A DNA stretch of 64,000 bases from the IMG/VR virus record IMGVR_UViG_3300048008_000449, positions 62,001 through 126,000 of that record; one strand, written 5' to 3'. The notes below the pieces were generated by a model. That model did no database searches and was not told where the DNA came from. It saw nothing but the letters and a program-made list of their open reading frames with translations. Shown here piece by piece: positions 25,028-57,530 of this stretch. Position 1 is the stretch's first letter; each line of letters starts with the position of its first letter. A program made the position numbers and the translations under genes.

Positions 25028-25633
25028 TCAATTTCGCAATTCTTTATACTGGATAACTGTTTCAATTCTAATATTAAGATCATCGCTATGTGATAGTTTA
25101 AACAACATCATTGTTTCTTCACTGTTGCAAAACACAATTGGAACACTTTCTCTATTTCTATGCATAAAGTATCTAATGTGTACTATACGTCTATCATGGA
25201 AATCAAAGTTATCATATATCCATTTTATAGTAGCATTGTCTTTTTCTAGTGTACCAACACCATACTTTGGCCAACTTATTAGTTTATGTTTGTAGTTGTT
25301 ATACCATAACTTATCACGTATAACAACACTTCTATCTTTTTCGTATAATAGTTTTTTATGTGTATCACTTATTGGTTCGTGTATTTTATCTATTTTTCTA
25401 TATAAGAAATCATCAGATTTTATCTGATCAACCATATCAACGTCAGATGTATAAACTGCTAAATTATATGTTGTTTCTGATTTTTTTGTTTTAACACCAC
25501 GCCATATTGTTTGACCATCTAATCCTATTTTAGGATAATTGAAAACGTAGTTAAACGGCAGGTCTAGAAATTTAATACATGTATCAAAGTATCTGTAATA
25601 TAATGACTGCGATGGAAATACATTATTTTCCAT
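25028..25633 (-). CDS. Hypothetical protein
   Basis: Start re-called at MENNVF, overlapping the clpA stop. Confidence 0.6.
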   Translation of the reverse strand: MENNVFPSQSLYYRYFDTCIKFLDLPFNYVFNYPKIGLDGQTIWRGVKTKKSETTYNLAVYTSDVDMVDQIKSDDFLYRKIDKIHEPISDTHKKLLYEKDRSVVIRDKLWYNNYKHKLISWPKYGVGTLEKDNATIKWIYDNFDFHDRRIVHIRYFMHRNRESVPIVFCNSEETMMLFKLSHSDDLNIRIETVIQYKELRN

Positions 25634-27887
25634 TAATAAGTAACTTGTCTTTTTGCCAATCAAGCTCCAATGTAAACTCGCCTTCATTATTAAGTAGATA
25701 TTTTGCTAATGGTAATTTTACTGATTCGTTGATTACTCGTTGTAGTGGTCTTGCACCCATTGTAGGATCGTACCCTTTATCTTCTAGCATGGCTAATAAT
25801 CCTGGTCCCCACTGTAATACAATATTTCTACCTTCAACATATGATTCTAATTCTCCTAAGAACTTAATAACAATACGTTTCATATCATTTTGCTCTAGTG
25901 CGTTAAATTTAACAATTCCATCTAATCTATTTCTAAACTCTGGAGCAAAGTAATTGTTTACTGCATCATCAACTGCTTTTGCATTAAATGTTTCTTCGTT
26001 GAATCCAATTGTAGCAATTGCCGCATCTTTTGCACCTAGGTTACTAGTCATAATAATAATTGCATTTTTAGCACTTACTACTTTACCTGTACTGCTCGTA
26101 AGTGTACCTTCATCAAGTAAACTTAACAATACACTCATTAAGTCAGGGTGTGCTTTTTCTACTTCATCTAATAACAATAAGCAATTTGGATTATCTTCTA
26201 GATGACTTATTAGTAAGCCATCTCCTGCTTTACCATCACCATGTCCTACATAGCCTGGAGGTGATCCAATTAGTTTTGATACTGTATGACGTTCTTGATA
26301 TTCTGCCATATCATAACGTACAAGTTTCATACTCATTGCTTGTGCTAGACGTTTAGCAAGTTCTGTTTTACCAACACCTGTTGGACCCGTAAACAAATAA
26401 CTAGCAACAGGTTTAGTAGGATCTTTTAATCCAGCCATGCTAACTGTAATACTATCTACTACACGATCAACTGCTGGTTGTTGTCCAAATACTGTACTTT
26501 CTAAAAATGTTTTAACTTCTGTATGTTTTGTTACAGTCTGTTTATCTTCTACGTTACCTAAATGTTCTTTTGGTATTCCTGTAAGTCTTGCTACCTCTGC
26601 TCTAATTTCTTCTTCGCCTATAATAGTTAAGCGATCTGCTTCTGGTAAAATTCTATTAAATGCACATGCTCTATCAAGTATATCAAATGCTTTGTCTGGT
26701 AATTTCTTGTTAAAGATATATTGGTCACTTAGTTCAACTGCTAATTCTGCGGCATCTTCAGTAATACTAACATTGTGATAATGTTCATAAGATATCATTG
26801 TACCTCTAACTACTTCTTTTGCCTCAATTATATTAGGCTCATCACATACAACTTTTGTAAACCTACGTGCCAATGCACTTTCTTTTTCAAATACTTTTCT
26901 ATATTCTTCGTCTGTTGTAGCACCAATAACTTTTAGTTTTCCACTACTCAATGCAGGCTTTAACATATTACCAGCATCCATAGTACCATTTGTACTACCT
27001 GCTCCAATAATTTGATGTATCTCATCAATGAATAAAATAATGTTAGGCTCTTTAATTAATGCTTCGCCTAATTGTTTCATACGTTCTTCAAAGTCACCTC
27101 TATATTTGGTACCAGCAACTAACTTAGTCATATCTAATTCCCATACAACCTTGTCTTTAATAATGTCTGGAACGTTACCTTCTACAATAAGTTTTGCTAA
27201 TCCTTGTACAACTGCTGTTTTACCAACACCACTTCCACCTGTTAAAATAGCATTAGATTTTTTCTTACGTGCTACTGTTTGTACTAGGTCTTTTAATTCT
27301 TTTCTACGGCCAATTAAATCATCATAATCTTGGCTTTCTTCATTTAAATTATTACAAAATTGTTTTAATACTTCACGTGGAGTTACTGCTCTCTGACCGC
27401 CTGGTCCTGGCATACCTGCAGCCATACCATCTACTGGTCCAAAGATTTGTTCATCTTTCATTGCGGCTGTATCTTGCATCCAACTCATTACTTTGTTTTT
27501 GTTTAGGCCCAATTGTTCTGCATATTTAGATGACACACTATGTTCTTCACCTAGTATACTCAATACTAAGTCAAGTTGGTTAATTACTTTTTTGCCTTGA
27601 AACAATGCTTGTGTTAACGCACGATTAAATACACGTTCTAACATTTGTGTCTTAGCAGGATTTGGTTCTTCTTTAGTATTTTTTACTAATTCTTTACATT
27701 CTTTTTCTAAGTATTCAATTAATGCAATTTGCAAACTTTCTGCATCTGCATTAATTTCGTAACACATTGCTATTACATGTGGGTCGTCTAGAATCACTGC
27801 GGCTAAGTGTTCTATTGTAACATATTCGTGTTTGAACTTCTTAGCTAAGTTAATTGCTGTTATTACTATTTTTTCAATGTCTGTCAT
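25623..27887 (-). CDS. clpA: ATP-dependent Clp protease ATP-binding subunit ClpA
   Basis: Clp-N (HEYVTIEHL), two AAA+ modules (GVGKT/FIDEIH; GPTGVGKT/LLDEVEKAHP), IGF loop, no ClpB M-domain. Confidence 0.93.
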   Translation of the reverse strand: MTDIEKIVITAINLAKKFKHEYVTIEHLAAVILDDPHVIAMCYEINADAESLQIALIEYLEKECKELVKNTKEEPNPAKTQMLERVFNRALTQALFQGKKVINQLDLVLSILGEEHSVSSKYAEQLGLNKNKVMSWMQDTAAMKDEQIFGPVDGMAAGMPGPGGQRAVTPREVLKQFCNNLNEESQDYDDLIGRRKELKDLVQTVARKKKSNAILTGGSGVGKTAVVQGLAKLIVEGNVPDIIKDKVVWELDMTKLVAGTKYRGDFEERMKQLGEALIKEPNIILFIDEIHQIIGAGSTNGTMDAGNMLKPALSSGKLKVIGATTDEEYRKVFEKESALARRFTKVVCDEPNIIEAKEVVRGTMISYEHYHNVSITEDAAELAVELSDQYIFNKKLPDKAFDILDRACAFNRILPEADRLTIIGEEEIRAEVARLTGIPKEHLGNVEDKQTVTKHTEVKTFLESTVFGQQPAVDRVVDSITVSMAGLKDPTKPVASYLFTGPTGVGKTELAKRLAQAMSMKLVRYDMAEYQERHTVSKLIGSPPGYVGHGDGKAGDGLLISHLEDNPNCLLLLDEVEKAHPDLMSVLLSLLDEGTLTSSTGKVVSAKNAIIIMTSNLGAKDAAIATIGFNEETFNAKAVDDAVNNYFAPEFRNRLDGIVKFNALEQNDMKRIVIKFLGELESYVEGRNIVLQWGPGLLAMLEDKGYDPTMGARPLQRVINESVKLPLAKYLLNNEGEFTLELDWQKDKLLINGK

Positions 27888-32703: not shown

Positions 32704-33441
32704 TCAATCGGGAATTTTAATGCCATCAAACAGTATATCAGAATAGGTTGTTACTAGTTCTCTCCAGTTTGGCAATGGCGGGGAATTTATAATATCGCAT
32801 AATCTATAATATTCCATAGGTTTGTGCCTAAAGATTTCTCCAATATCAATTTTGTGTATTGCAATACCTTTGGCTTCAAATTCCATTTTATAATGGATAT
32901 ATTCTTCGTAATGATCTTTAAACTTTAATGGCTGTGCAAGATGAAATGTATCTGGAGCAATTGTTCTTTCATATGGTAAATTATGATCAGTTCCTACACA
33001 TATGGCAAACATATCTGCTAGTTCTTCTTGATCACAATCAAGTACAATATGTGTTGTTACATTAGTATCTTTATTATGTATAATATCAAATCTAGACAAT
33101 GCATAATTTAAGTAATGATATGGATTAAGTCTAAACACAAGTTTTGTAAAATCACCTACTCCTTGTCTTAGTGCCGCTTCAATTTGGTCATCAAATGGAT
33201 GTACTTCATTTATCCACTTATCACCAAATTTATTTTCACAATGAAATGTTTCAGGTCTCCAACTTCTACCTTGATGTCCTATCATATCTGTACCAGTAGG
33301 ATTTTCTTTTCTCATATCCATGTCAGGTACTTGTGCAAATCCTTCATGTCTTTGAATTAACCAAGAGATAAATTCACCTGGTAATCCTGAAGGATGTATT
33401 ATTGAAAATGCTTCTGGTTTTGGTCTTTCTAAAATAGGCAT
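32704..33441 (-). CDS. Hypothetical protein
   Basis: 245 aa, overlaps the radical SAM stop. Confidence 0.65.
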   Translation of the reverse strand: MPILERPKPEAFSIIHPSGLPGEFISWLIQRHEGFAQVPDMDMRKENPTGTDMIGHQGRSWRPETFHCENKFGDKWINEVHPFDDQIEAALRQGVGDFTKLVFRLNPYHYLNYALSRFDIIHNKDTNVTTHIVLDCDQEELADMFAICVGTDHNLPYERTIAPDTFHLAQPLKFKDHYEEYIHYKMEFEAKGIAIHKIDIGEIFRHKPMEYYRLCDIINSPPLPNWRELVTTYSDILFDGIKIPD

Positions 33442-34721
33442 GGTTGTTTTGGTCCGTAAATTATTTCTGCTAAATCTGGATTATAATCATACAAGTATAC
33501 ATCTCTAAATTTATCCTGTTCACGTACAAGTTCTTGGAATACAGATAAATGATGTTCTTTTGTATCTAATGCTTTTCTCATATCATTAAGTGTTCTAATA
33601 TTATGTGTGTCTTTATTATGATATCTTAGTTCTGCTTTGTTAATTATATTGTGTGCATGTTTTTTATAAGAATCTGGTAAGTTTCCAGATCTTAAATGTG
33701 CTGGAAATACTACTAGTCTTAAATTACTATCAGCTTTATGATCATATACAAAATCTAAAAAGTCTAGTGTATTATCATAATTAAATATTTGGTAACTAGC
33801 ATTAATTTGAACACCAAACCATTTGTTTTCTTGTGCAAACTTAGATAGCTTACCACATTGTTCTTCCATTTGGCTCCAAGTAAATACACCGTTACTACGC
33901 ATGTATTCAAACATTGGACCAGCGGCATCAATACTAATATCTAATGTAAGTTTTTTTAGTTTATGAAATAGTCCTAATTTTTCTACATTTACTTTTGATC
34001 CATTTGTAGTAATAACCATTTTAATTTTTTCTGGGTATCCGTGTTCTTCAATAAGTTCCATTAACCTATATGGACTATCATCCATAAATGGTTCTCCACC
34101 TGTCATCCAAATACTTCTGATACCTTTTAGTACTGTAGGATTCTTTTCTAAATATGGAATAATACTGTTAAAGTTTTTTGGGTTAGACCATTGAAACTTT
34201 TTATATTCTCTAGGAAACTTACTGTTCATGTGTTTAGCTTCAGGTATTAAACTGTTGCTGTAATTTGGACTACACATTCTACATTTAAAGTTACACACAT
34301 TACTAAAGTTTACAAATAAATGGCTTATGTCATTTCCTACTAACTTTGGAGTACGATATGGTTCAGGGTTGCCTAACTGATCCATCATCTTCTTTCCAAG
34401 CCAATTCATACGTTGACTTTTTTGTCCGTTCTTTTCTCTATTCAAACAGTTGGTACATCCATAAGTATCCCATTTACCGTCAAGCATGTTTTGACGTAAT
34501 GTTTGCATTTCTTTACTGTCGTGGCTCTCGCCCATGTCGTCATCACTCATCATGCAACGACTTACAACGCCTGAAGGATGCCAACTAATAGTATTAAATG
34601 GAACTGGACACCAACTTTTACTGTGTAGGTTTTTCCAGTTATCATCTTCAACTACTTTTGTTACAATATCCTTGGCAGGTATAATAAATTTATCTTTGTT
34701 TATGTCTGTTGGATTATTCAT
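33429..34721 (-). CDS. Radical SAM protein with N-terminal SPASM/twitch domain
   Basis: WCPVPF...RC...CTNC, CNFKCRMC, GGEP, TTNG. Confidence 0.9.
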   Translation of the reverse strand: MNNPTDINKDKFIIPAKDIVTKVVEDDNWKNLHSKSWCPVPFNTISWHPSGVVSRCMMSDDDMGESHDSKEMQTLRQNMLDGKWDTYGCTNCLNREKNGQKSQRMNWLGKKMMDQLGNPEPYRTPKLVGNDISHLFVNFSNVCNFKCRMCSPNYSNSLIPEAKHMNSKFPREYKKFQWSNPKNFNSIIPYLEKNPTVLKGIRSIWMTGGEPFMDDSPYRLMELIEEHGYPEKIKMVITTNGSKVNVEKLGLFHKLKKLTLDISIDAAGPMFEYMRSNGVFTWSQMEEQCGKLSKFAQENKWFGVQINASYQIFNYDNTLDFLDFVYDHKADSNLRLVVFPAHLRSGNLPDSYKKHAHNIINKAELRYHNKDTHNIRTLNDMRKALDTKEHHLSVFQELVREQDKFRDVYLYDYNPDLAEIIYGPKQPCLF

Positions 34722-35949
34722 TGTATATAAAGTTACCTAAAATGCTATGATAATCATGCATTGTTTTATTCCTATATTTATCTTGTGCTTTTGTGAAGGC
34801 TTTAAACTTGTCTATCATATCTTGATTTGCTTGTGGTGCTTGTAAGTTTTTAAGTACGTCATCAAAAGTTCTTTGAAATCTTGGATCATTAACTATCTTA
34901 TAGTCTTTAATTTTTTCATATTCCTTCATACGTATATCTGTTGGTAATACATTTAGTCTAAGGTGTTCAGGAAAAATTAACATCCTAGTATTATTTAGTG
35001 CACCTGCATCTACACACAATTCATTAAATTCTGTTACTGTATCAAAGTTGTATGCTTGTATGCTTGCATTGAAACACATGTTAAACCAACCATCATTTTG
35101 CTTCTTAAAATGTTTAAGGTCATCTATTAATGAACGCATTTGTTGCCATGTATATAATCCATCGCTACGCATATATTCAAACATGTTACTAGCCGCATCA
35201 ATACTTAAATCTAATTCAAACCATTTTAAGTTTTCAAACTTTTGTAACTTATCTAAATCTACTTTAGATCCATTTGTAGTAATAACAACATCCATATCCC
35301 AAGATTTATCATATTCGTTTAATATATCCATTAAATCAAAACAGTTGTCGTCCATAAATGGTTCGCCGCCTGTTATCCATATACTTGATAGACTATCTAA
35401 TTTCTCTGGATGTTCTCTTAGGTATGTATTAATAAAATTTCTATTTTTAATAATCTCTGGTTTTACTTTTCTTGCTAAACCAAGTGTATTTAAATGTTTA
35501 TGTTCAGGTATGAGACTATTACTATAACCTGGGCTACACATTCTACATTTAAAATTACAAATATTACTGTAATTTATAAACATATGATTAACAGGGTTTC
35601 CTGTTACTTTTGGATTCATATATCCATCTGTGTTTCTAAAATCGTCTGGATTACGTTGTAACCATTTTTGTCTTTGACTAATGTTGCCTTGTTCTTCTTT
35701 TTTAAGGCAGTTAATACAACCTTCTTTATCCCATACACCATTAAGCATATCAGTTCGAAGTTTTTGCATTTCTTTACTGTCGTAGTCTTCCCCCATCGGT
35801 ACATCGCTCATCATACAACGAGTTAATACACCGGTGGGGTGAAAACTTATAGCGTTGAAAGGTATTGGACACCACGCATTACCGTGGTCGACTTTAGTAT
35901 ACTCTTTGTATATACCTTGTCTTCTTTGTAAATCATTATCATTACTCAC
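34714..35949 (-). CDS. Radical SAM protein with N-terminal SPASM/twitch domain (tandem paralog)
   Basis: WCPIPF...CINC, CNFKCRMC, GGEP; closely similar to its neighbour. Confidence 0.9.
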   Translation of the reverse strand: MSNDNDLQRRQGIYKEYTKVDHGNAWCPIPFNAISFHPTGVLTRCMMSDVPMGEDYDSKEMQKLRTDMLNGVWDKEGCINCLKKEEQGNISQRQKWLQRNPDDFRNTDGYMNPKVTGNPVNHMFINYSNICNFKCRMCSPGYSNSLIPEHKHLNTLGLARKVKPEIIKNRNFINTYLREHPEKLDSLSSIWITGGEPFMDDNCFDLMDILNEYDKSWDMDVVITTNGSKVDLDKLQKFENLKWFELDLSIDAASNMFEYMRSDGLYTWQQMRSLIDDLKHFKKQNDGWFNMCFNASIQAYNFDTVTEFNELCVDAGALNNTRMLIFPEHLRLNVLPTDIRMKEYEKIKDYKIVNDPRFQRTFDDVLKNLQAPQANQDMIDKFKAFTKAQDKYRNKTMHDYHSILGNFIYNE

Positions 35950-38977: not shown

Positions 38978-39054
38978 TGGTACTCCCGGTAGGATTCGAA
39001 CCTACGATCGACCCGTTATGAGCGGGTGGCATTAGACCGCTATGCTACAAGAGT
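38978..39054 (-). tRNA. tRNA with CAT anticodon, probably tRNA-Ile2 (lysidine type); Met not excluded
   Basis: Cloverleaf; anticodon arm ACCCG-CTCATAA-CGGGT; GGTTCGAATCC; encoded CCA. Confidence 0.85.
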
Positions 39055-39058
39055 ATTC

Positions 39059-39144
39059 TGGTGCCTCCTCCCGGACTCGAACCGGGACGCCATTATGGCC
39101 ACAGATTTTAAGTCTGTTATGTCTACCTATTCCATCAAGGAGGC
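39059..39144 (-). tRNA. tRNA-Leu(TAA)
   Basis: Long variable arm; ACAGA-CTTAAAA-TCTGT; encoded CCA. Confidence 0.95.
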
Positions 39145-39149
39145 TAAAT

Positions 39150-39226
39150 TGGCCTGCTCTACAGGATTCGAACCTGTGACCTACTGCTTAGAAGGCAGTT
39201 GCTCTATCCAGCTGAGCTAAGAGCAG
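39150..39226 (-). tRNA. tRNA-Arg(TCT)
   Basis: ACTGC-CTTCTAA-GCAGT; encoded CCA. Confidence 0.95.
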
Positions 39227-41823: not shown

Positions 41824-41900
41824 TGGCGGACCCGAGAGGATTCGAACCTCTGACCTCCTGTTTCGTAGACAGGCATTCTATCCAGCTGAACTACGGGTCC
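41824..41900 (-). tRNA. tRNA-Arg(ACG)
   Basis: CCTGT-CTACGAA-ACAGG; encoded CCA; upstream sigma70-like promoter. Confidence 0.95.
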
Positions 41901-42614: not shown

Positions 42615-42928
42615 AATGGTCCCATCTTCGTTAATGGAGGCACTTCTGTTGCCAGGTAGTACCCACCCCTACGTGCTTAGTTAAACTAAGCCGCTAATGC
42701 CATTTCTGGCGAATAATTGTCATTTGCAATTATAGTTTTTGTTCGCGGTAACGGCGCTTACATCCCGGTAACTCCACTCATCTATCCTAACAGTCGATCC
42801 TAGTTCAGCCCCATCAAAAACACACTTACAAGCAGTGATTCAATATCTCATCTATAAATGTGTTTATGGTGGAGCTGCTCGGTACTGCCCCGAGGTCCTG
42901 TCTAGTCGTCAAATCGCTTCAACGTTAC
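42615..42928 (-). ncRNA. ssrA: Two-piece (circularly permuted) tmRNA, alphaproteobacterial type; tag (A)ANDNYSPEMALAA
   Basis: Acceptor piece ...GGGGCAGTACCGAGCAGCTCCACCA (CCA at 42867), hairpin spacer, GGGGCTGAACTAGGATCGAC starting 42812 (G3:U70), tag ORF 42727-42686; TATAAATA at 42935-42942; outer ends approximate. Confidence 0.93.
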
Positions 42929-42951
42929 AAGTTATATTTATACACTCTTGT

Positions 42952-43458
42952 TTATGTTTTGTCAACCTTTTTAAAGACATATTCAAAATTTTGTGTATTT
43001 GGATTATGTTGTACTAATTTTGCACCATTGCTAATATGAAAATGTGTAGCCATTGGTGTAAGTGGAGAAAGTGTAACCAAACGTTCAATATCATTTTTAT
43101 CTTTATAATAATCTTTTAGTTTAGCTACAATTTCTCTGCCAGCTCCTTTTTTACGTGACCATACTGTGTATGCAACTGCTATACTAGCATCATCAAGTAA
43201 ATTAGCATTCTGGCTTATAATGTTTAGTTCTCTTTCACTTTGTGGAATATCGTTACAATATGCAATGCATATAATACCTTGTATCTCATCATTGGCTTTT
43301 AGACCAAATATTTTTCTACCAAATGATGTTCTAAATTCCATATCTAAATTAGGCCTTACTGGATCTTCAGAACAATCTATGTCAGTTAGTTCAACTAGCT
43401 CACTAGATGATACCCACTTAAAGAAGTTATCAATTGAATCTTTAATTACTTTCAACAA
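42952..43458 (-). CDS. Hypothetical protein, GNAT-like
   Basis: YTVWS.KKGAGR, VTLSP...FHISNGA. Confidence 0.55.
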   Translation of the reverse strand: MLKVIKDSIDNFFKWVSSSELVELTDIDCSEDPVRPNLDMEFRTSFGRKIFGLKANDEIQGIICIAYCNDIPQSERELNIISQNANLLDDASIAVAYTVWSRKKGAGREIVAKLKDYYKDKNDIERLVTLSPLTPMATHFHISNGAKLVQHNPNTQNFEYVFKKVDKT

Positions 43459-48710: not shown

Positions 48711-49276
48711 AATCCTAATACTCCATATGCTTCGTATGGCAACCAATGTGTATTCATTCTTTCAGGGTGCCAAAGTACTGTTATAATGTTATCTAGTTTC
48801 CAGCTCTCACAATTTCCATCTTCGTCTGTTGCTAATGTTGTTGCTCCATACGGTATACTACTTAATATTTCTTCGTGACGACTGTGAACTTTAATCTCAC
48901 TACCATTGTAGTATACATTATGATCTTGCTTGTGTCTACCATTTAGTGCGATTTTACCACCAAAACTCACGTTGAGGAATTGGCATCCTCTGCTGATTCC
49001 TAGTATAGGTTTATTATAGAGCTTTGCTAAATCTAACGTGTGCTTTTCTACTCTTAAACGGTTTTCATCATATTGCCAATTACCGGGTACCATACTGTTA
49101 CCACCTGTAAACACTACTAGATCGCTTTTAACCACAATGTCTGTTTGGTAGTGTTCTAAGTTATTTGGAATTGGTCTTAATGTGTGTCCAGAGAACATGT
49201 CATAGAATCCGTGATCTAAGCTGTCGTATGGACCGTTTCGAAAGTCAATCACACGTTGCGTGATTGCTATTTTCAT
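48707..49276 (-). CDS. Class I glutamine amidotransferase-like protein (Cj1417-like) with Ser at the nucleophile position
   Basis: IAITQR, TGGN, LGISRG, WHPE. Confidence 0.8.
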   Translation of the reverse strand: MKIAITQRVIDFRNGPYDSLDHGFYDMFSGHTLRPIPNNLEHYQTDIVVKSDLVVFTGGNSMVPGNWQYDENRLRVEKHTLDLAKLYNKPILGISRGCQFLNVSFGGKIALNGRHKQDHNVYYNGSEIKVHSRHEEILSSIPYGATTLATDEDGNCESWKLDNIITVLWHPERMNTHWLPYEAYGVLGL

Positions 49277-49281
49277 TTATT

Positions 49282-49584
49282 TTATTCTGTTTTTTCTAAT
49301 GTGACTTCTAATGGAAAACCATTTCGTCTAGATTCTGTAATAGCTTCAACACATTTCTGTTCAGCTACTTCATAACTATATGTGCCTGCAATACCTCGGC
49401 CTTTTTCGTGGACCTCAAGCATCACTGACTTTGCTTCGTCTAATGTTTTATTAAAAGTTTGTTGTAAAACAATAACTACAAAGTCTTGCGGAGTGCTTTC
49501 GTCATTAAGTATGATCACATTAAACTTAGGTGGACTACTTAATTTAGTGATTTCTGCTACTTCGTCTTGTGATGCTTGTGCCAT
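49282..49584 (-). CDS. clpS: Clp protease adaptor ClpS
   Basis: VIILNDESTPQDFV, MLEVHEKG, EVAEQK, FPL. Confidence 0.92.
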   Translation of the reverse strand: MAQASQDEVAEITKLSSPPKFNVIILNDESTPQDFVVIVLQQTFNKTLDEAKSVMLEVHEKGRGIAGTYSYEVAEQKCVEAITESRRNGFPLEVTLEKTE

Positions 49585-49594
49585 GTTTTACCTT

Positions 49595-50020
49595 TTAATC
49601 TATGTTAATTGTTCTTGGTTTCTTTTCGTCTGGAATATTCTGTTCCAATGTAACTACTAAGATTCCGTTATCTAGTTTAGAAGATGTTACTTCTACATAA
49701 TCAGCTAAACTAAATTCTCTATTAAAGTTTCTAGTTCCAATGCCTTTGTGTAAGTATTCAACTTCATTATCGCTTTCTTTTTTTTCTGCTGAAATTGACA
49801 ATGTGTTTCCATCTTGTTTAATTGTTAGTTCGTCTTTATCAAACCCTGCAACTGCTAAACTAATCGTATAGCTATTATCGCTTTCCTTTACAATATTGTA
49901 TGGGGGATAACCACCTGTTACGTTAGCTGAAAATGCATGTTGCATATCATCAAACATCTTATCAAAGCCTATAGTAGCTTTATAAAAGTCTGGTAGGTTT
50001 AATGTTGTTAATCTAGTCAT
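49595..50020 (-). CDS. Small heat-shock protein Hsp20 (IbpA-like)
   Basis: IGFD, YPPYNI, LAVAGF, YLHKGI, PRTINI. Confidence 0.95.
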   Translation of the reverse strand: MTRLTTLNLPDFYKATIGFDKMFDDMQHAFSANVTGGYPPYNIVKESDNSYTISLAVAGFDKDELTIKQDGNTLSISAEKKESDNEVEYLHKGIGTRNFNREFSLADYVEVTSSKLDNGILVVTLEQNIPDEKKPRTINID

Positions 50021-50100
50021 AATTGTTCTCCTTTGTTAAGCAAGATTATTTAGAACCCTTTCGGCGTTCTATGTATATAGAAATCAGTTCTATTATACAT
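50021..50100 (-). promoter_or_regulatory. ROSE-like RNA thermometer
   Basis: TCTTGCTT-AACA-AAGGAGA hairpin with a bulged G over the SD, plus two upstream hairpins. Confidence 0.7.
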
Positions 50101-50131
50101 TGTTATTTATGCACATCTGTGCAAAAATTCT

Positions 50132-50380
50132 TTAATTATTTGTATACTTGTCTTTAGCAATACGTCTACGATGTCTAGCACGTCCTGCCGCTTCTGCTTT
50201 AAGTCTTTTTTCCGTATTACTTATAAAGTGTTTACGGTCACGAACTTCTTGCATAATACCATCTTTAGCAATCATCTTTTTTAATCTTCTCATTGCTTGT
50301 TCAACGTTATTATTTCTAACTTCAACTGTTAATCCGTTTCCGCCTTTTCTGTCTCTGTCTCTGTGATTATTATTTGCCAT
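50132..50380 (-). CDS. rpsU: 30S ribosomal protein bS21
   Basis: VEVRNNNVEQAMRRLKK...G...EVRDRKHF. Confidence 0.9.
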   Translation of the reverse strand: MANNNHRDRDRKGGNGLTVEVRNNNVEQAMRRLKKMIAKDGIMQEVRDRKHFISNTEKRLKAEAAGRARHRRRIAKDKYTNN

Positions 50381-50383
50381 AAT

Positions 50384-50905
50384 TTATATTTTCCCGGTTA
50401 CCCTGTTATTTTGTGATGATATCTGCTCGTACTCTACTTCTAATAAGTATGCAAACGTATTTAGCAACTCTTTTGCCATGTCTTGTTTACCACGTTCTCT
50501 ACCTCTTAATAAAACAGTAACCATTAGTTTATTATTTTTTTCCAAAAACTTACGAGCCATTCTGGCCTTTGTTTCTAAATCATGTGTATCAATATTTAGA
50601 CCCATGCGTATTTCTTTGGTCTCAACAACGCTCTCTCGTTGCTTTTTCTTTGCCAGTTTTTCTTTTTGTTTTAACGAGTACAAGTGCTTATTAAGATCAG
50701 TTATTTTGCATACAGGTGGTGTTGCTTTATCTGCAACTAGTATCAAATCTAACCCTAATGACCTGGCCTCTTTTAAAGCATCTGTTGTTGACATGATCTG
50801 GCTTTCCATATCATCACCTGATACCCTAATTTGTTTATGTCTTATCTTCTCGTTGGAAATAACAAAAGGTTTTTCCTCACGTCTTTTATAATTTCTATTC
50901 TGCAT
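50384..50905 (-). CDS. infC: Translation initiation factor IF-3
   Basis: NEKIR, LDLILV...PPVCKI, KEIRM...IDTHDL..K, RGRE; ATG start at MQNR with SD. Confidence 0.9.
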   Translation of the reverse strand: MQNRNYKRREEKPFVISNEKIRHKQIRVSGDDMESQIMSTTDALKEARSLGLDLILVADKATPPVCKITDLNKHLYSLKQKEKLAKKKQRESVVETKEIRMGLNIDTHDLETKARMARKFLEKNNKLMVTVLLRGRERGKQDMAKELLNTFAYLLEVEYEQISSQNNRVTGKI

Positions 50906-52109
50906 TGTCACCTTTAATATATTGTGGCTGTGCGTTTCTAGAAATAACTTGTTCATTTATAATAATTTTTCGTATTCCTTGCTCGTATAATTCAGGTAAG
51001 TTATATTGTGTTTCTAATAATGAAGCATCTAATATCTTACGTAAACCTCTAGCTCCTATTTCTTCTTTAATTGCAATGTCTGCAACTTCTTCTAATGCTT
51101 TTATTGTAAACTCTATTTGTATTTTGTCAAGTAGAAAAAGCTCTTTTATTTGATCTACAATACTATCTGTGGGTTCAGTTAGTATTTTTACAAGATCGTT
51201 CTTATTTAAGGGGCTAAGGACGTTTACAGACGGTAATCTACCCACAAATTCGGGTATAAGTCCATATTTCACTAAATCACGTGTTTGTAAGTGCTTTTCC
51301 CACTGTTCTATATCGGTGTCTAAATCGTCGTTAAATCCTATCTTCGACTTACCTAGGCGATTAACCACAACATCTTGTAGACCTACAAAGGCTCCACCTA
51401 CTACAAATAGTATCTCACTGGTGTCAATATCTACTTTCTCCGGGTTATGTTGCGGTTTGTTCGGAACCGTTACTACTATACCTTCCATGAGCTTTAAAAG
51501 GCTCTGTTGGACACCTTCTCCAGATACGTCTCTACTCAAACTAACATAGTCATTACGTTTAGCTTTCTTATCAATTTCGTCAACATATATAATTCCATGT
51601 TGTGCTGATTCTATATCATAGTTAGCGGCTTGAAACAATTTGTGTATTAGTACTTCTGAGTCATCACCTGCATAACCGCTTTCAGTTATTGTTGTTGCAT
51701 CAGTTACTACCATTGGAACATTAAGCAATTTAGCAAGTGTTTGTGCCATTAGTGTTTTACCAGTTCCTGTAGGACCAGCAATTAATACATTACTTTTTTG
51801 TAGCTTGGTTTTTGTTTTAGAAGTTATTCTTTTATAGTGATTATATACTGCTACACTTAAAGTCTTTTTTGCATGATCTTGACTGATAACATTCTCATCT
51901 AAAAATTTATGAATTGCTCTTGGCGTTGGAAGAACTGTTTTCTTTTGCAATGCGTCAGATACTTTAACTTTGTCATTCTTAACTATACTATAACAAAATT
52001 CAACACACCCACTACAAATATGGATATTGTTTTCTCCTGCTAATAGTTTAGTTATTTGTGTAGTGTCTTTACCACAAAAATTACAATGAGGTAAATTACT
52101 TTTCATCAA
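50895..52109 (-). CDS. clpX: ATP-dependent Clp protease ATP-binding subunit ClpX
   Basis: C4 zinc domain, GPTGTGKT, YVDEIDK, RDVSGEGVQQ, IGF, GARGLR. Confidence 0.95.
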   Translation of the reverse strand: MMKSNLPHCNFCGKDTTQITKLLAGENNIHICSGCVEFCYSIVKNDKVKVSDALQKKTVLPTPRAIHKFLDENVISQDHAKKTLSVAVYNHYKRITSKTKTKLQKSNVLIAGPTGTGKTLMAQTLAKLLNVPMVVTDATTITESGYAGDDSEVLIHKLFQAANYDIESAQHGIIYVDEIDKKAKRNDYVSLSRDVSGEGVQQSLLKLMEGIVVTVPNKPQHNPEKVDIDTSEILFVVGGAFVGLQDVVVNRLGKSKIGFNDDLDTDIEQWEKHLQTRDLVKYGLIPEFVGRLPSVNVLSPLNKNDLVKILTEPTDSIVDQIKELFLLDKIQIEFTIKALEEVADIAIKEEIGARGLRKILDASLLETQYNLPELYEQGIRKIIINEQVISRNAQPQYIKGDNAE

Positions 52110-52545
52110 AATACTCTGGATTCATTTGCAACCTTACAAAATTATTAATATCATCTATAGAACGTACAACTAGGTTAGTTCCTGTAGCATTTATTAATTT
52201 TACAGTTTCCCTTCTCTTGTACTTATCACTATAAAATAGCACCGTATTCTCAGTTTTTTGTGATTTTAAAAGTGCCGCCATAATGTCTTCCCATGCACAA
52301 GTATCTACATCAACTATCATAAAGTCACATGTATTAGATACATTCCATACCCACGGTAATGTAGCTGACGTTGTTTTTTTATTTTGTACAAAAAATACTA
52401 CACTTGTAGCAATGTATTTTTCAAACAATTCTTTTATATCTGTTATTAATATTTCATTAGTGCTAGAAATACATATTCCTATTCCATGTTCCGTTAACAT
52501 CAAATCTGGAGCTGTTACAGTGTAACTATCATTATCAATTGTCAT
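52096..52545 (-). CDS. Hypothetical protein
   Basis: 149 aa, overlaps both neighbours. Confidence 0.65.
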   Translation of the reverse strand: MTIDNDSYTVTAPDLMLTEHGIGICISSTNEILITDIKELFEKYIATSVVFFVQNKKTTSATLPWVWNVSNTCDFMIVDVDTCAWEDIMAALLKSQKTENTVLFYSDKYKRRETVKLINATGTNLVVRSIDDINNFVRLQMNPEYFDEK

Positions 52546-55401: not shown

Positions 55402-55989
55402 TTATACTTTTCTTGTAACAACTTTGTCAGCCAAACCAAAATCTACTGCTTCTTGAGCAGACATAAAATTATCACGTTCCATTGCATCTTCTAGTTGAGC
55501 AAATGTTTTGCCAGCTGAATTATGATGCACATAAGCCTGTGTTAGTTGTTGCTTCATCTTAAGAATTTCTTTAACTTGAATTTCCATATCAGTTGCCTGT
55601 CCACCTGCACCACCGCTTGGTTGGTGAATCATTGTACGACTGTTAGGCAACACAAAACGTTTACCCGGTTCTCCTGCCATTGCAAGGAAACTGCCCATGC
55701 TACATGCTTGACCCATAACAATTGTACTTACTGGAGATTTAATAAATTGCATTGTATCATAGATTCCTAAGCCTGCTGTAACTACTCCGCCTGGGCTGTT
55801 AATATAAAAATTAATAGTTTCGCTACTATTTTGTGATTCTAAAAATAGCATTTGTGCAACAATTAAGTTTGCACTGTGATCATTAACATCACTTGTAAGC
55901 ATTACGATACGATCTTTTAGCAAACGACTATAAATGTCATATGCACGTTCGCCTCTGCCTGTACTTTCGATTACTGTTGGTATTATCAT
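55402..55989 (-). CDS. clpP: ATP-dependent Clp protease proteolytic subunit
   Basis: DIYSRLL, YINSPGG, ACSMG, MIHQP, RDNFM. Confidence 0.97.
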
Positions 55990-57017: not shown

Positions 57018-57530
57018 TTATCCTTCCATTGTTATTGCACCTAATGCAATTGCATAAAGTGAATGTGAGTGAATCTTAGTCATTATATCCAAAAGATTTG
57101 CTTTTTCTTGTAAGAAAACTTTAGCGAACTTTGGATCGTTTGCTACGATATCTGCACTGTTGTCAATTAAGTCAGCTAGCTTGATAATTTGTGCTTGCTC
57201 ACTTGCTAATCCAAGACGTTTAGCATCTATGCCTTTACGTACTGCCCTGTTACCATCTTCGGGTTTACTAGTATCAGTTAATTCAAGAACCAACTTAAAT
57301 ACAACCCAACCAAATTCTTCAGCAATCATTGCAGGCGATACATGTGTGTCTTCGATGACATCATGTAGCAATGCCGCGGCGATCATCTCATCAGTTCCGC
57401 CATGCTCTTTTACAAGTCTAGCAACCCTGATTGGATGTACGATATAATCGTCTCCGCTATATTTTCGTTTCTGACCAACTGCGGCATGAGCCACAGTTGC
57501 GAAAAGTTTTGCTTTTTGAATGATGTCCAT
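57018..57530 (-). CDS. HD-domain protein, small alarmone hydrolase-like (SpoT/Mesh1 family)
   Basis: AH..QKRK, YIVHP, AALLHDVIEDT, LTD, IKLAD..DN. Confidence 0.85.
   Translation of the reverse strand: MDIIQKAKLFATVAHAAVGQKRKYSGDDYIVHPIRVARLVKEHGGTDEMIAAALLHDVIEDTHVSPAMIAEEFGWVVFKLVLELTDTSKPEDGNRAVRKGIDAKRLGLASEQAQIIKLADLIDNSADIVANDPKFAKVFLQEKANLLDIMTKIHSHSLYAIALGAITMEG

What the first reader, a model, noticed from the sequence alone, without database searches (positions are those of the whole stretch)
50132..50905. Phage-encoded IF3 next to bS21: reprogramming translation initiation
Seen: infC and rpsU are adjacent and co-transcribed with clpX. The phage infC appears to start with ATG plus SD. 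Established: many bacterial infC genes use an ATT start for autoregulation, IF3 levels govern leaderless and non-AUG initiation, and bS21 sits by the anti-SD. bS21 is well known in phages; IF3 is less commonly reported. Inference: the pair tunes ribosomes for this phage's leaderless, ATT-, TTG- and GTG-initiated genes.
Basis: partly seen in the sequence, partly recalled or inferred. Interest (0 to 1): 0.66.

Follow-up and report, generated by a model that had tools for sequence, protein, structure and literature searches.

The report
Jumbo-phage IF3 and bS21 gene pair
A large marine phage carries its own copies of two bacterial translation-start proteins, IF3 and ribosomal protein bS21, as a tightly coupled gene pair; the pair is real, conserved and probably expressed, but it belongs to a kind already reported in jumbo phages and shows no sign of serving unusual start codons.

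Summary
On the minus strand, clpX (50895-52106), infC (50384-50905, ATG plus AAAGGTGA) and rpsU (50132-50380) lie head to tail, with an 11-nt overlap and a 3-nt gap. Pfam, PDB sequence matches and an AlphaFold model confirm a full two-domain IF3 and a bS21.

The window is part of a 205-kb fragment of a marine huge phage. The order orf149-ClpX-IF3-bS21-(Hsp20)-ClpS recurs in all 14 related metagenomic loci I examined. It also occurs, loosened, in the cultured Agrobacterium phage Atu_ph07, whose S21 is unannotated.

All 20 jumbo-phage IF3s, including RaK2-like phages, form one clade apart from 72 bacterial-type IF3s. All start on ATG, GTG or TTG, whereas 60 of 70 bacterial infC genes need an AUU, AUA or AUC start.

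A promoter-like site inside clpX is conserved at the nucleotide level. RNA-library contigs span infC-rpsU.

The phage's genes are mostly ATG-started and SD-led, and I found no enrichment of ATT starts. Published work shows 30S-bound IF3 disfavours non-canonical and leaderless starts.

My best reading is a feedback-free supply of IF3 and bS21 that sustains canonical initiation. IF3 and S21 in jumbo phages are already published, so this is a new member of a known kind.

The parts
50384..50905 (-). infC: phage translation initiation factor IF3, 173 aa. ATG start at 50905 with the SD AAAGGTGA inside the clpX 3' end.
   Evidence: Pfam IF3_N E 1.7e-20 and IF3_C E 2.1e-19. PDB IF3 chains match at E 7e-26 and 2e-36 with a profile. 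AlphaFold2 pLDDT is 85.4 with N domain, linker helix and a beta-alpha-beta-alpha-beta-beta C domain. Foldseek top hits are 30S-bound IF3, TM 0.73-0.80. dN/dS is 0.13 against the nearest relative.
50132..50380 (-). rpsU: phage ribosomal protein bS21, 82 aa. It has a 15-aa basic, Asn-rich N-terminal extension and a short C-terminus (KDKYTNN) without the RLY motif. Its ATG lies 3 nt after the infC stop, and it has no SD of its own.
   Evidence: Pfam Ribosomal_S21 E 1.2e-13. Residues 19-78 align to residues 4-64 of solved bS21 chains. Tail comparison. dN/dS 0.11.
50895..52109 (-). clpX: AAA+ unfoldase with an N-terminal zinc finger. The likely start is the ATG at 52106 (a TTG sits at 52109). Its last 11 nt overlap infC.
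   Evidence: Pfam zf-C4_ClpX, AAA_2 and ClpB_D2-small. It lies directly upstream of infC in every related locus.
51103..51130 (-). Promoter-like site TTGACA-16 nt-TACAAT inside clpX. The -35 hexamer starts 225 nt before the infC ATG. It is a candidate internal promoter for infC-rpsU.
   Evidence: 11 of 12 consensus matches. Present at the same place in 13 of 15 loci. It is always encoded as CTT GAC AAx, although CTT is 18% of Leu codons and GAC 34% of Asp codons in these clpX genes. The -10 element keeps TAnnAT through T/N/K amino-acid changes. L015, one of the loci lacking the site, uses TTA GAT. RNA-library contig depth is 32-41 downstream of about 51160-51460 and 2-4 upstream.
50021..50131 (-). 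Structured rpsU-hsp20 spacer with three conserved hairpins. The last part resembles a ROSE RNA thermometer that masks the hsp20 SD (UCUUGCU...AGGAG).
   Evidence: Folds of 14 loci. ROSE_3 is the best Rfam match but is below threshold: 19.4 bits against 43, E 0.048, at 50015-50073. 5 of 11 predicted pairs show compensatory changes.
49595..50020 (-). hsp20 (IbpA-type small heat-shock protein), the next gene of the module.
   Evidence: Pfam HSP20 E 1.3e-20. Conserved position in relatives.
49282..49584 (-). clpS (Clp protease adaptor), a module member. ClpS is also the direct neighbour of IF3 in RaK2-like phages.
   Evidence: Pfam ClpS E 6.7e-27. IF3-ClpS adjacency in CBB, XbC2, RaK2 and Munch.
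52096..52545 (-). orf149, a conserved protein of unknown function directly upstream of clpX and overlapping it.
   Evidence: No Pfam family passes the cut-off. Conserved at 41-79% identity in all close relatives.
55402..55989 (-). clpP (Clp protease subunit), in the same gene string upstream.
   Evidence: Pfam CLP_protease E 7.8e-79. Same position in L002 and L004.
57018..57530 (-). RelA/SpoT-type HD-domain protein (HD_4), possibly a (p)ppGpp hydrolase, in the same gene string upstream.
   Evidence: Pfam HD_4 E 1e-14. Also present in L002. The function is inferred from the family only.

Best explanation
**What it is (shown).** The stretch encodes a genuine phage IF3 and a genuine phage bS21 as a translationally coupled pair, under purifying selection.
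- The pair sits in an old, vertically inherited module of Clp protease parts and Hsp20. This module belongs to a lineage of jumbo myoviruses that includes the RaK2-like phages, Agrobacterium phage Atu_ph07 and a widespread marine clade.

**How it most likely works (inferred).** The phage makes its own IF3 free of the host's feedback control.
- Bacterial infC is held in check because IF3 rejects its own AUU/AUA/AUC start codon. The phage gene starts on ATG with an SD, is coupled to clpX, and probably also has its own promoter inside clpX.
- bS21 has no SD of its own and starts 3 nt after the infC stop. It is therefore probably made by re-initiation, in step with IF3.
- IF3 keeps 30S subunits free, recycles them and enforces canonical start codons.
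- bS21 is a loosely bound, exchangeable 30S protein needed for SD-led mRNA binding.
- Together they would raise or preserve the pool of initiation-competent 30S subunits and favour canonical, SD-led, ATG-started messages, which is what this phage's own genes look like.
- The likely setting is a slow-growing marine host, probably an alphaproteobacterium.

**What is not shown.** Whether the divergent phage IF3 has the same stringency as the host factor is unknown.
For: **Gene identity**
- Pfam, PDB sequence matches and the predicted fold agree.
- Residues important in E. coli IF3 are kept: Y75, D106, K110, R131, G132-R133-E134 correspond to phage Y76, D109, K113, R134, G135-R136-E137, which are invariant or nearly so in 45 clade members.

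**Conservation**
- The ClpX-IF3-bS21 order occurs in all 14 distinct related metagenomic loci, down to 37% IF3 identity.
- The infC stop to rpsU ATG distance is 0-20 nt in nearly all of them, with an ATGA overlap in L012.
- dN/dS is 0.10-0.13 against the nearest relative.

**Ancestry**
- All 20 jumbo-phage IF3s form one clade (SH-aLRT 99) on a long stem, apart from 72 bacterial-type sequences.
- IF3 sits next to ClpS in RaK2, CBB, XbC2 and Munch.
- Atu_ph07 has ClpX-IF3 ... S21 ... Hsp20 ... ClpS.

**Loss of the autoregulatory start**
- 60 of 70 bacterial infC genes need AUU/AUA/AUC.
- All 15 marine-clade genes, 4 RaK2-like genes and Atu_ph07 start on ATG, GTG or TTG.

**The phage's own genes are canonical**
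- 82% ATG first starts, with SD enrichment of 51% against 13%.

**Expression**
- Contigs with no differences, 2.1 and 2.5 kb long, from metatranscriptome libraries cover the clpX 3' end, infC, rpsU, hsp20 and clpS. Coverage is patchy, as expected of RNA.
- The promoter-like site inside clpX is conserved at synonymous positions.

**Published background**
- IF3 debars non-canonical starts (PMC9723500) and disfavours leaderless mRNA on the 30S subunit; its overproduction shifts ribosomes to free subunits (PMC8138138).
- Phage bS21 enters ribosomes (PMC6375957).
Against: - There is no functional test of any kind here.
- The phage IF3 lies on a long branch. R99 of E. coli is G102 in the whole clade, and the linker is 2 residues longer, so its specificity could differ from host IF3.
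- Ribosomes carrying pelagiphage bS21 were nearly inactive in an E. coli in vitro system (about 5% of control, PMC6375957). A phage bS21 could therefore be inhibitory or strictly host-specific.
- Excess IF3 can itself depress 70S formation (PMC8138138), so 'more IF3' is not self-evidently beneficial.
- The RNA evidence is from assembled contigs only. It shows no strand, 5' end or expression level, and I could not lay a silent control stretch because the single reads call was used.
- The host is not identified. No IF1, RRF or SmpB was found, but the record is only about 56% complete.
Confidence: 0.5

Rival explanations
1. One reading: the phage IF3-bS21 pair relaxes or retunes start-site selection so that leaderless, ATT-, TTG- and GTG-initiated phage genes are translated well.
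For: - IF3 and bS21 do act at start-site selection and next to the anti-SD (PMC9723500, PMC7550191).
- The phage IF3 is strongly diverged from bacterial IF3, so altered stringency is possible.
- 50S-bound IF3 has been reported to favour leaderless mRNA (PMC8138138).
- About 18% of first canonical starts are TTG or GTG.
Against: - ATG starts and SD motifs dominate.
- There is no enrichment of SD-led ATT/ATA/ATC starts beyond those that sit next to an ATG.
- Most genes at the head of a gap have an SD.
- GTG and TTG are canonical for IF3.
- The fidelity-linked residues Y75, D106, R131 and E134 are conserved.
- 30S-bound IF3 disfavours leaderless and non-canonical starts (PMC8138138, PMC9723500).
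Confidence: 0.07
2. Phage-specialised ribosomes and host shut-off: phage bS21 displaces host bS21 and phage IF3 competes with host IF3, so that modified 30S subunits prefer phage leaders and translate host mRNAs poorly.
For: - bS21 is exchangeable, and phage bS21 enters E. coli ribosomes and nearly abolishes their activity in vitro (PMC6375957).
- The phage bS21 has a 15-aa basic N-terminal extension, of the kind proposed to aid competitive binding (PMC7162821).
- Its C-terminal tail, which lies by the SD helix (PMC7550191), varies between RLY and short forms within the clade.
- The IF3 branch is long.
Against: - I identified no phage-specific leader motif other than an ordinary SD.
- Watson et al. 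found no link between phage S21 type and ribosome-binding-site consensus (PMC7550191).
- The inactivity in E. coli may be simple incompatibility.
Confidence: 0.2
3. Stress and dormancy rescue: the pair belongs to a module that wakes hibernating or starved ribosomes. IF3 would split and recycle idle 70S or 100S particles, and bS21 would refill sub-stoichiometric 30S subunits. The partners would be Clp protease, Hsp20, an HD-domain (p)ppGpp-hydrolase-like protein and a tmRNA.
For: - The conserved neighbours are ClpP, ClpX, ClpS, ClpA-like, Hsp20 and HD_4.
- An alpha-type tmRNA lies 8 kb away.
- hsp20 carries a ROSE-like element.
- Phage bS21 is strongly enriched in aquatic viruses (PMC6375957).
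- IF3 levels rise under stress (cited in PMC8138138).
- The phage is found in many seawater runs.
Against: - This rests on guilt by association only.
- No hibernation factor, RRF or HflX was found in the record (for RRF; the others were not searched).
- The enterobacterial RaK2-like phages keep IF3 without bS21, so the pair is not obligatory.
Confidence: 0.18
4. Replacement after damage: host IF3 or bS21 is destroyed or blocked during infection, either by the phage's own Clp system or by a host defence, and the phage copies are resistant substitutes.
For: - infC is physically coupled to clpX, and clpS, clpP and a clpA-like gene lie close by, across the whole lineage.
- The phage proteins are strongly diverged.
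Against: There is no evidence that host IF3 or bS21 is a Clp target, and no defence system aimed at them is known to me. This is inference only.
Confidence: 0.05

Closest known systems
IF3 genes of cultured RaK2-like jumbo phages (Klebsiella RaK2, Cronobacter GAP32, Pectobacterium CBB, Xanthomonas XbC2, Salmonella Munch and others)
   Same: - They fall in the same monophyletic phage IF3 clade (SH-aLRT 99).
- They have a canonical ATG start with an SD.
- ClpS lies next to or near IF3.
- Genome size is about 350 kb, as estimated here.
- They are already annotated as IF3, and Iyer et al. suggested a role in supporting phage translation or ribosome rescue (PMC7824862).
   Different: - Only 35-40% identical.
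- No bS21 anywhere in those genomes at Pfam sensitivity.
- clpX is not adjacent.
- Their hosts are Gammaproteobacteria.
Agrobacterium phage Atu_ph07 and Sinorhizobium phage AP-J-162
   Same: - Atu_ph07 has ClpX directly upstream of IF3. Further down the same strand it has an S21 homologue, then Hsp20 and ClpS.
- For AP-J-162 the published account lists S21 (gp532), IF-3 (gp547) with clpX adjacent, Hsp20 and a tmRNA (PMC11242549).
- Both hosts are Alphaproteobacteria, which fits the alpha-type tmRNA here.
   Different: - IF3 and S21 are not adjacent: about 1.4 kb apart with an opposite-strand ORF between them in Atu_ph07, and 15 gene numbers apart in AP-J-162. They are therefore not translationally coupled.
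- IF3 is 36% and S21 32% identical to the window's proteins.
- The Atu_ph07 S21 (AUZ95452.1) is annotated as hypothetical.
- They are soil phages with 470-490 kb genomes.
Translation genes of huge phages (Al-Shayeb et al. 2020, PMC7162821)
   Same: They report IF1, IF3 and ribosomal proteins S21, S1, S4 and L7/L12 in huge phages, S21 N-terminal extensions, tmRNAs, and the idea of redirecting host translation.
   Different: In the text I read, that paper does not describe a conserved, coupled infC-rpsU pair, the loss of the AUU-type start, or the Clp/Hsp20 context.
bS21 of Pelagibacter phage HTVC008M and other aquatic phages (Mizuno et al. 2019, PMC6375957)
   Same: A phage bS21 in marine viruses, under purifying selection and shown to enter ribosomes. 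It is among the only tblastn matches to the window's bS21 in the phage collection (41-50% identity over 56% of the length).
   Different: HTVC008M is a 147-kb T4-like phage. In HTVC008M, bS21 looks like a recent capture from the host (54% identical, PMC6375957). Here the best bacterial match is 51% or less over part of the protein, and the gene is fixed in an old module.
Bacterial infC (infC-rpmI-rplT operon, autoregulated through an AUU-class start codon)
   Same: The same two-domain protein family, fold and key residues.
   Different: - ATG start instead of AUU/AUA/AUC.
- The neighbours are clpX and rpsU, not rpmI and rplT.
- Long separate branch.
- Clade-specific residues G102, N104 and R138, and a linker 2 residues longer.

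Membership tests
Bacterial-type translation initiation factor IF3 (InfC) | IF3_N and IF3_C domains both present above the curated thresholds | tested here: met
   PF05198 scores 73.4 bits (cut-off 26.9) and PF00707 scores 69.7 bits (cut-off 34.8). The six-frame search gives 72.8 bits over positions 1-81 of 86.
Bacterial-type translation initiation factor IF3 (InfC) | Two globular domains joined by a long Lys-rich helical linker, with a beta-alpha-beta-alpha-beta-beta C domain | tested here: met
   The AlphaFold2 model has pLDDT 85.4, a helix at 71-92, and C-domain elements E96-102, H107-122, E126-132, H135-155, E161-165 and E168-172. Foldseek top hits are full-length IF3 on 30S subunits, TM 0.73-0.80.
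Bacterial-type translation initiation factor IF3 (InfC) | Residues linked to 30S binding and fidelity in E. coli (Y75, D106, K110, R131, G132-R133-E134) | tested here: met
   Aligned to E. coli chain 8jsg_A, these are Y76, D109, K113, R134, G135, R136 and E137. All are invariant or nearly so in 45 clade sequences. The position of R99 is G102. The position of R129 is L132, and Thermus has M there. The functional importance of these residues is from my own knowledge of the IF3 mutagenesis literature.
Bacterial-type translation initiation factor IF3 (InfC) | Non-canonical AUU/AUA/AUC start codon (the basis of autoregulation) | tested here: not met
   ATG at 50905 with an SD. 60 of 70 bacterial infC genes need AUU/AUA/AUC. 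This is a regulatory habit of the gene, not a property of the protein.
Bacterial-type translation initiation factor IF3 (InfC) | Operon context infC-rpmI-rplT | tested here: not met
   The neighbours are clpX upstream and rpsU downstream.
Bacterial-type translation initiation factor IF3 (InfC) | Binds 30S subunits, prevents subunit joining and proofreads the start codon | not testable with these tools
   Needs biochemistry.
Ribosomal protein bS21 | Ribosomal_S21 domain above threshold in a small, very basic protein | tested here: met
   PF01165 scores 51 bits against a cut-off of 27. Residues 19-78 align to residues 4-64 of bS21 chains from solved ribosomes, best E 1.6e-7.
Ribosomal protein bS21 | C-terminal RLY or KLY motif (Gamma- and Betaproteobacteria type only, PMC7550191) | tested here: not met
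   The window copy ends KDKYTNN and its nearest relative ends KDKFTNN. 7 of 13 clade members end in RLY or RLF. The motif is absent from most bacterial phyla, so this does not argue against membership.
Ribosomal protein bS21 | Incorporation into the 30S platform | not testable with these tools
   Shown for another phage bS21 in E. coli (PMC6375957), not for this one.
Jumbo-phage IF3 lineage (RaK2-like, Atu_ph07-like and the marine clade) | Falls in one clade with the other jumbo-phage IF3s, apart from bacterial IF3 | tested here: met
   20 phage rows form one side of a branch with SH-aLRT 99, against 72 bacterial-type rows. These are quick searches without bootstraps, and long-branch attraction is not excluded.
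Jumbo-phage IF3 lineage (RaK2-like, Atu_ph07-like and the marine clade) | Linked to Clp genes (ClpS and/or ClpX next to IF3) | tested here: met
   ClpX overlaps infC, and ClpS lies two genes downstream. Compare.
Jumbo-phage IF3 lineage (RaK2-like, Atu_ph07-like and the marine clade) | Canonical start codon | tested here: met
   ATG here. ATG, GTG or TTG in all 20 members examined.

The most novel reading that the evidence does not exclude
The infC-rpsU pair builds a phage-adapted 30S subunit.

- A feedback-free, diverged IF3 and a bS21 with a basic N-terminal extension would together change which mRNAs the host ribosome accepts.
- The bS21 tail would be matched to the host class (RLY present or absent).
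- The pair would also reactivate idle ribosomes in starved marine Alphaproteobacteria.
- This would make it a two-protein translation-takeover device, inherited for a very long time across jumbo phages.
- It could be tested directly in Atu_ph07 on Agrobacterium.
Probability: 0.15. Interest if true: 0.7.

Novelty: new member of a known kind. Interest (0 to 1): 0.4.

Why it matters
Phage-encoded IF3 and bS21 are known, but nobody has shown what they do.

This locus adds four concrete points:
- In a widespread marine huge-phage clade the two genes are one coupled unit.
- All jumbo-phage IF3s examined share one origin and have dropped the AUU-class start that lets bacteria throttle IF3.
- The unit seems to have its own promoter hidden inside clpX.
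- The same module, with an overlooked S21, sits in cultured Atu_ph07.

The last point gives a laboratory system in which to test the function of a module otherwise known only from ocean metagenomes. If the pair proves to bias or revive host ribosomes, it would explain why aquatic phages so often carry bS21.

As it stands, the finding is a solid annotation with a corrected interpretation, not a new kind of system.

Tried and rejected
- **Megablast against the phage collection.** Searching 3.5 kb around the locus gave no match, so there is no close cultured relative.
- **Standard tmRNA (RF00023) in five related viral contigs.** Only tRNA-sized sub-threshold hits appeared, so host type could not be compared across relatives.
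- **Class-level sampling around a MAG titled 'Pseudomonadales'.** It returned the same genome set as the alphaproteobacterial MAG. That label is not a gammaproteobacterium in the tool's taxonomy and the search added nothing. I have no labelled gammaproteobacterial set, only a Pseudomonadota-wide sample.
- **bS21 against 185,579 species genomes.** The best matches were 51% identity or less, mostly Alphaproteobacteria MAGs. There is no recent donor, and I built no bS21 tree because the protein is too short.
- **Sigma-70 promoter scan.** It found no more sites than shuffled sequence (49 against 49.2). I take the clpX-internal site seriously only because of its cross-locus conservation.
- **ClpX tblastn.** It is uninformative for phage kinship: about 45% identity to many unrelated records.
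- **IF1, SmpB and RRF.** None was found in the 205-kb record. The record is about 56% complete, so absence is not shown.
- **The upstream ATG at 50956 as the infC start.** Rejected because it is not conserved.
- **The short bS21 tail as an assembly error.** Rejected because the nearest relative has the same tail.
- **L018, L019 and the 'Bacteriophage sp.' fecal record L152.** L019 and L152 group with Bacillota IF3, and L152 has an ATT start with a strong SD. L018 grouped with them in the first tree and was then dropped as a very long branch. None of the three belongs to the jumbo-phage clade.
- **No complex prediction was run.** I do not claim that IF3 and bS21 bind each other.
Full report
**1. 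The observation**

All genes in the region are on the minus strand.
- rpsU runs 50380 to 50132 (82 aa).
- infC runs 50905 to 50384 (173 aa).
- clpX runs 52106/52109 to 50895.
- The infC ATG at 50905-50903 is preceded by AAAGGTGAca. The clpX stop (TAG, 50897-50895) lies 11 nt inside infC, so the infC SD is part of the clpX coding end.
- The infC stop TAA is followed by att and then the rpsU ATG. rpsU has no SD of its own.

Pfam gives IF3_N plus IF3_C, Ribosomal_S21 and zf-C4_ClpX/AAA_2 well above the curated cut-offs.

**2. What the window is**

The window is bases 62001-126000 of a 204,772-bp IMG/VR virus record that CheckV rates 56% complete. That implies a phage of roughly 350 kb.
- GC content is 34%.
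- The window holds four tRNAs and a permuted tmRNA that Rfam assigns to the alphaproteobacterial type at 123 bits.
- The stretch occurs in at least 14 seawater or viral metagenome runs.

The gene string around the pair, all on the minus strand, is:
- HD_4 (RelA/SpoT-type HD domain)
- an unknown protein
- ClpP
- a Zeta/AAA_33 P-loop kinase
- SNase
- a 565-aa membrane/coiled-coil protein
- orf149
- ClpX, IF3, bS21, Hsp20, ClpS
- a class-I glutamine amidotransferase
- a cytidylyltransferase
- GMP reductase

A ClpA-like double AAA+ protein and a CCA-adding enzyme lie further away.

**3. The proteins**

*IF3*
- It matches solved IF3 chains at E 7e-26, and 2e-36 with a clade profile.
- An AlphaFold2 model built on 45 clade sequences has pLDDT 85.4. 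It shows the N domain, a long linker helix (71-92) and the beta-alpha-beta-alpha-beta-beta C domain.
- Foldseek's best matches are full-length IF3 bound to 30S subunits, TM 0.73-0.80.
- Against E. coli IF3 (chain 8jsg_A), the residues Y75, D106, K110, R131 and G132-R133-E134 are kept as Y76, D109, K113, R134 and G135-R136-E137. They are invariant or nearly so across the clade. I know these residues as important from the mutagenesis literature.
- Clade-specific traits are G102 (R99 in E. coli), N104, R138 and a linker 2 residues longer.

*bS21*
- Residues 19-78 align to residues 4-64 of solved bS21 chains. It therefore has a 15-residue basic, Asn-rich N-terminal extension, of the kind noted for huge-phage S21 (PMC7162821).
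- It ends in KDKYTNN. Seven of 13 clade members end in RLY or RLF. The nearest relative has the same short tail (KDKFTNN), so the short tail is real.
- In E. coli the RLY tail packs against 16S helix h37 beside the SD helix. It is typical of Gammaproteobacteria, with KLY in Betaproteobacteria, and is absent from other phyla (PMC7550191).

*Selection.* Both genes are under purifying selection: dN/dS is 0.13 and 0.11 against the nearest relative.

**4. Relatives**

- The word-index search found 253 IF3 homologues at 49-89% identity, on contigs up to 322 kb, from marine and sediment samples.
- All 14 distinct related loci that I fetched have orf149-ClpX-IF3-bS21, mostly followed by Hsp20 and ClpS, down to 44% IF3 identity. 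L017, at 37%, keeps only ClpX-IF3-bS21.
- The infC stop to rpsU start distance is 0-20 nt in nearly all. L012 has an ATGA overlap. L002 has a 97-nt spacer with a promoter-like TTGACA-17-TATACT.
- In the phage collection, 102 records hold an IF3 homologue. Most are the RaK2-like enterobacterial jumbo phages, at 35-40% identity. There IF3 is directly followed by a ClpS-domain protein.
- A Pfam search of whole records finds no S21 in CBB, XbC2, RaK2 or Munch.

*Agrobacterium phage Atu_ph07.* It has ClpX directly upstream of IF3. Across the record origin on the same strand lies an 83-aa 'hypothetical protein' (AUZ95452.1) that Pfam calls Ribosomal_S21 at 47 bits, followed by Hsp20 and ClpS.

*Sinorhizobium phage AP-J-162.* The published description of this relative already lists S21, IF-3 with clpX adjacent, Hsp20 and a tmRNA (PMC11242549).

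**5. Origin**

I built a maximum-likelihood tree of 92 IF3 sequences:
- 15 from the marine clade
- 4 RaK2-like
- Atu_ph07
- 25 Alphaproteobacteria
- 29 Pseudomonadota-wide
- 15 Bacillota
- 1 from the bdellovibrio-like MAG
- 2 other viral

The 20 jumbo-phage sequences fall on one side of a branch with SH-aLRT 99, with a long stem. Together with the shared Clp linkage, this points to one old acquisition and vertical descent, not a recent capture from the host.

These were quick searches without bootstraps. One very long row (L018) was left out of the second tree, and long-branch attraction is not excluded.

The best bacterial bS21 matches among 185,579 species genomes are 51% identity or less over part of the protein. 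They are mostly Alphaproteobacteria MAGs.

**6. Start codons**

I checked the 'established' part of the finding on data. Of 70 bacterial infC genes:
- 40 have no ATG, GTG or TTG at all between the frame opening and the N domain.
- 20 more have an SD-led AUU/AUA/AUC while the canonical candidates lack an SD.
- Only 2 have a canonical start with an SD and nothing else.

By contrast, all 15 marine-clade genes, the 4 RaK2-like genes and Atu_ph07 start on ATG, GTG or TTG with an SD. The phage lineage therefore lacks the feature on which IF3 autoregulation rests.

**7. Transcription**

- No terminator-like site separates clpX, infC and rpsU. The generic promoter scan is no better than chance overall.
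- One hit, TTGACA-16-TACAAT at 51130-51103 inside clpX, recurs at the same distance from infC in 13 of 15 loci.
- It is encoded as CTT GAC AAx in every case, although CTT is 18% of Leu codons and GAC 34% of Asp codons in these clpX genes.
- The -10 element keeps TAnnAT while the encoded residue changes (T, N or K).
- L015, one of the two loci that lack the site, uses TTA GAT.
- Synonymous sites between the deeper lineages are saturated, so this is nucleotide-level constraint.

*RNA-library evidence.*
- In two metatranscriptome runs of one sample, contigs identical to the window cover 49044-51160 and 48948-51462 at word depth 32 and 41. Contigs over the rest of clpX have depth 2-4, and other nearby stretches have none.
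- Two further studies hold variant pieces.
- The patchiness argues for RNA rather than DNA carry-over.
- Contigs cannot show strand, ends or level, and the single reads call left no room for a silent control.
- I read this as likely expression of infC-rpsU-hsp20-clpS, with a probable promoter of its own inside clpX in addition to read-through.

**8. The interpretation**

Across 271 ORFs of the record:
- The first canonical start is ATG in 221, TTG in 33 and GTG in 16.
- An SD of 4 nt or more precedes 51% of these starts, against 13% for internal in-frame codons. The spacing peaks at 6-7 nt.
- ATT/ATA/ATC codons with a strong SD upstream of the first canonical start are nearly all 1-2 codons before an ATG and share its SD. 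One candidate remains.
- Of 77 genes with more than 100 nt of upstream gap, 61 have an SD.

The phage therefore initiates in the ordinary way.

Published work says IF3 debars non-canonical starts (PMC9723500), discriminates against leaderless mRNA on the 30S subunit, and shifts ribosomes to free subunits when overproduced (PMC8138138). The same paper also reports that 50S-bound IF3 may favour leaderless mRNA.

**9. Best explanation and rivals**

*Shown:* a genuine, conserved, coupled, probably expressed infC-rpsU unit of an old jumbo-phage module, without the AUU-class start.

*Inferred:* it gives the infected cell IF3 that escapes host feedback, and bS21 made in step with it.
- This would keep 30S subunits free, complete and strict.
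- That suits SD-led, ATG-started phage messages in a probably slow-growing marine alphaproteobacterial host.

*Rivals I cannot exclude:*
- phage-specialised ribosomes with host shut-off
- a role in waking dormant ribosomes together with the Clp, Hsp20 and HD_4 neighbours
- replacement of damaged host factors

The near-inactivity of E. coli ribosomes carrying pelagiphage bS21 (PMC6375957) warns that phage bS21 need not be a simple spare part.

**10. Novelty**

- IF3 has been annotated in RaK2-like phages for years and was discussed by Iyer et al. (PMC7824862).
- IF1, IF3 and S21 in huge phages were reported by Al-Shayeb et al. (PMC7162821).
- S21 plus IF3 plus clpX in one cultured jumbo phage was described in 2024 (PMC11242549).

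As far as my searches of the held library show, the new points are:
- the tight infC-rpsU coupling across a marine clade
- the single origin of jumbo-phage IF3
- the systematic loss of the AUU-class start
- the clpX-internal promoter
- the unannotated S21 of Atu_ph07

This is a new member of a known kind, with a corrected interpretation.

Noticed in passing
window 50015-50095 (-), the 5' leader of hsp20 (49595-50020): The rpsU-hsp20 spacer folds into three hairpins that are conserved with compensatory changes in relatives. An invariant UCUUGCU can pair with the hsp20 SD AGGAG. The best Rfam match is the ROSE_3 RNA thermometer, but it is below threshold (19.4 bits against 43, E 0.048). This may be a phage-borne heat-shock RNA thermometer.
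   Followed up: partly
window 51103-51130 (-), inside clpX: A promoter-like TTGACA-16-TACAAT is conserved in 13 of 15 related loci at synonymous codon positions. It coincides with a step in metatranscriptome contig depth. It is a candidate internal promoter for infC-rpsU.
   Followed up: partly
L155 4597-4848 (-), which is MF403008.1 489096-489347, Agrobacterium phage Atu_ph07: The 83-aa 'hypothetical protein' AUZ95452.1 of this cultured jumbo phage is a bS21 homologue (Pfam Ribosomal_S21, 47 bits against a cut-off of 27). It lies downstream of ClpX-IF3 across the record origin, and before Hsp20 and ClpS.
   Followed up: yes
window 42633-42979 (-): A permuted, two-piece tmRNA of the alphaproteobacterial type (RF01849, 123 bits) with tag peptide ANDNYSPEMALAA. 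No SmpB was found in the 205-kb record. This points to an alphaproteobacterial host.
   Followed up: partly
window 38978-39226 and 41824-41900 (-): Four tRNA genes: Met(CAT), Leu(TAA), Arg(TCT) and Arg(ACG).
   Followed up: no
window 25623-27887 (-), 49282-49584 (-), 50895-52109 (-), 55402-55989 (-): The phage encodes what looks like a whole Clp system: a ClpA-like double AAA+ protein, ClpS, ClpX and ClpP.
   Followed up: no
window 57018-57530 (-): A 170-aa RelA/SpoT-type HD domain protein (HD_4, E 1e-14), possibly a (p)ppGpp hydrolase, in the same gene string and also present in relative L002.
   Followed up: no
window 12751-14598 (-): A 615-aa fusion of a CCA-adding / poly(A) polymerase head domain with an NT5C 5'-nucleotidase domain.
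   Followed up: no
window 5027-6238, 33429-34721, 34714-35949 (-): Three radical-SAM proteins of about 400-430 aa, two of them adjacent and overlapping.
   Followed up: no
bS21 C-termini in L002, L008-L011, L014, L015, L159 versus the window, L004, L012, L013, L016, L156: Within one phage clade the bS21 tail is either RLY/RLF (the gammaproteobacterial type) or short without it, and the two forms are mixed across the IF3 tree. Whether this tracks the host class is untested.
   Followed up: partly
L033 and L036 (MAGs titled 'uncultured Pseudomonadales'): Class-level sampling around the L033 genome returned the same genome set as around an alphaproteobacterial MAG. Its NCBI title therefore disagrees with the taxonomy used by the genome tool.
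   Followed up: no
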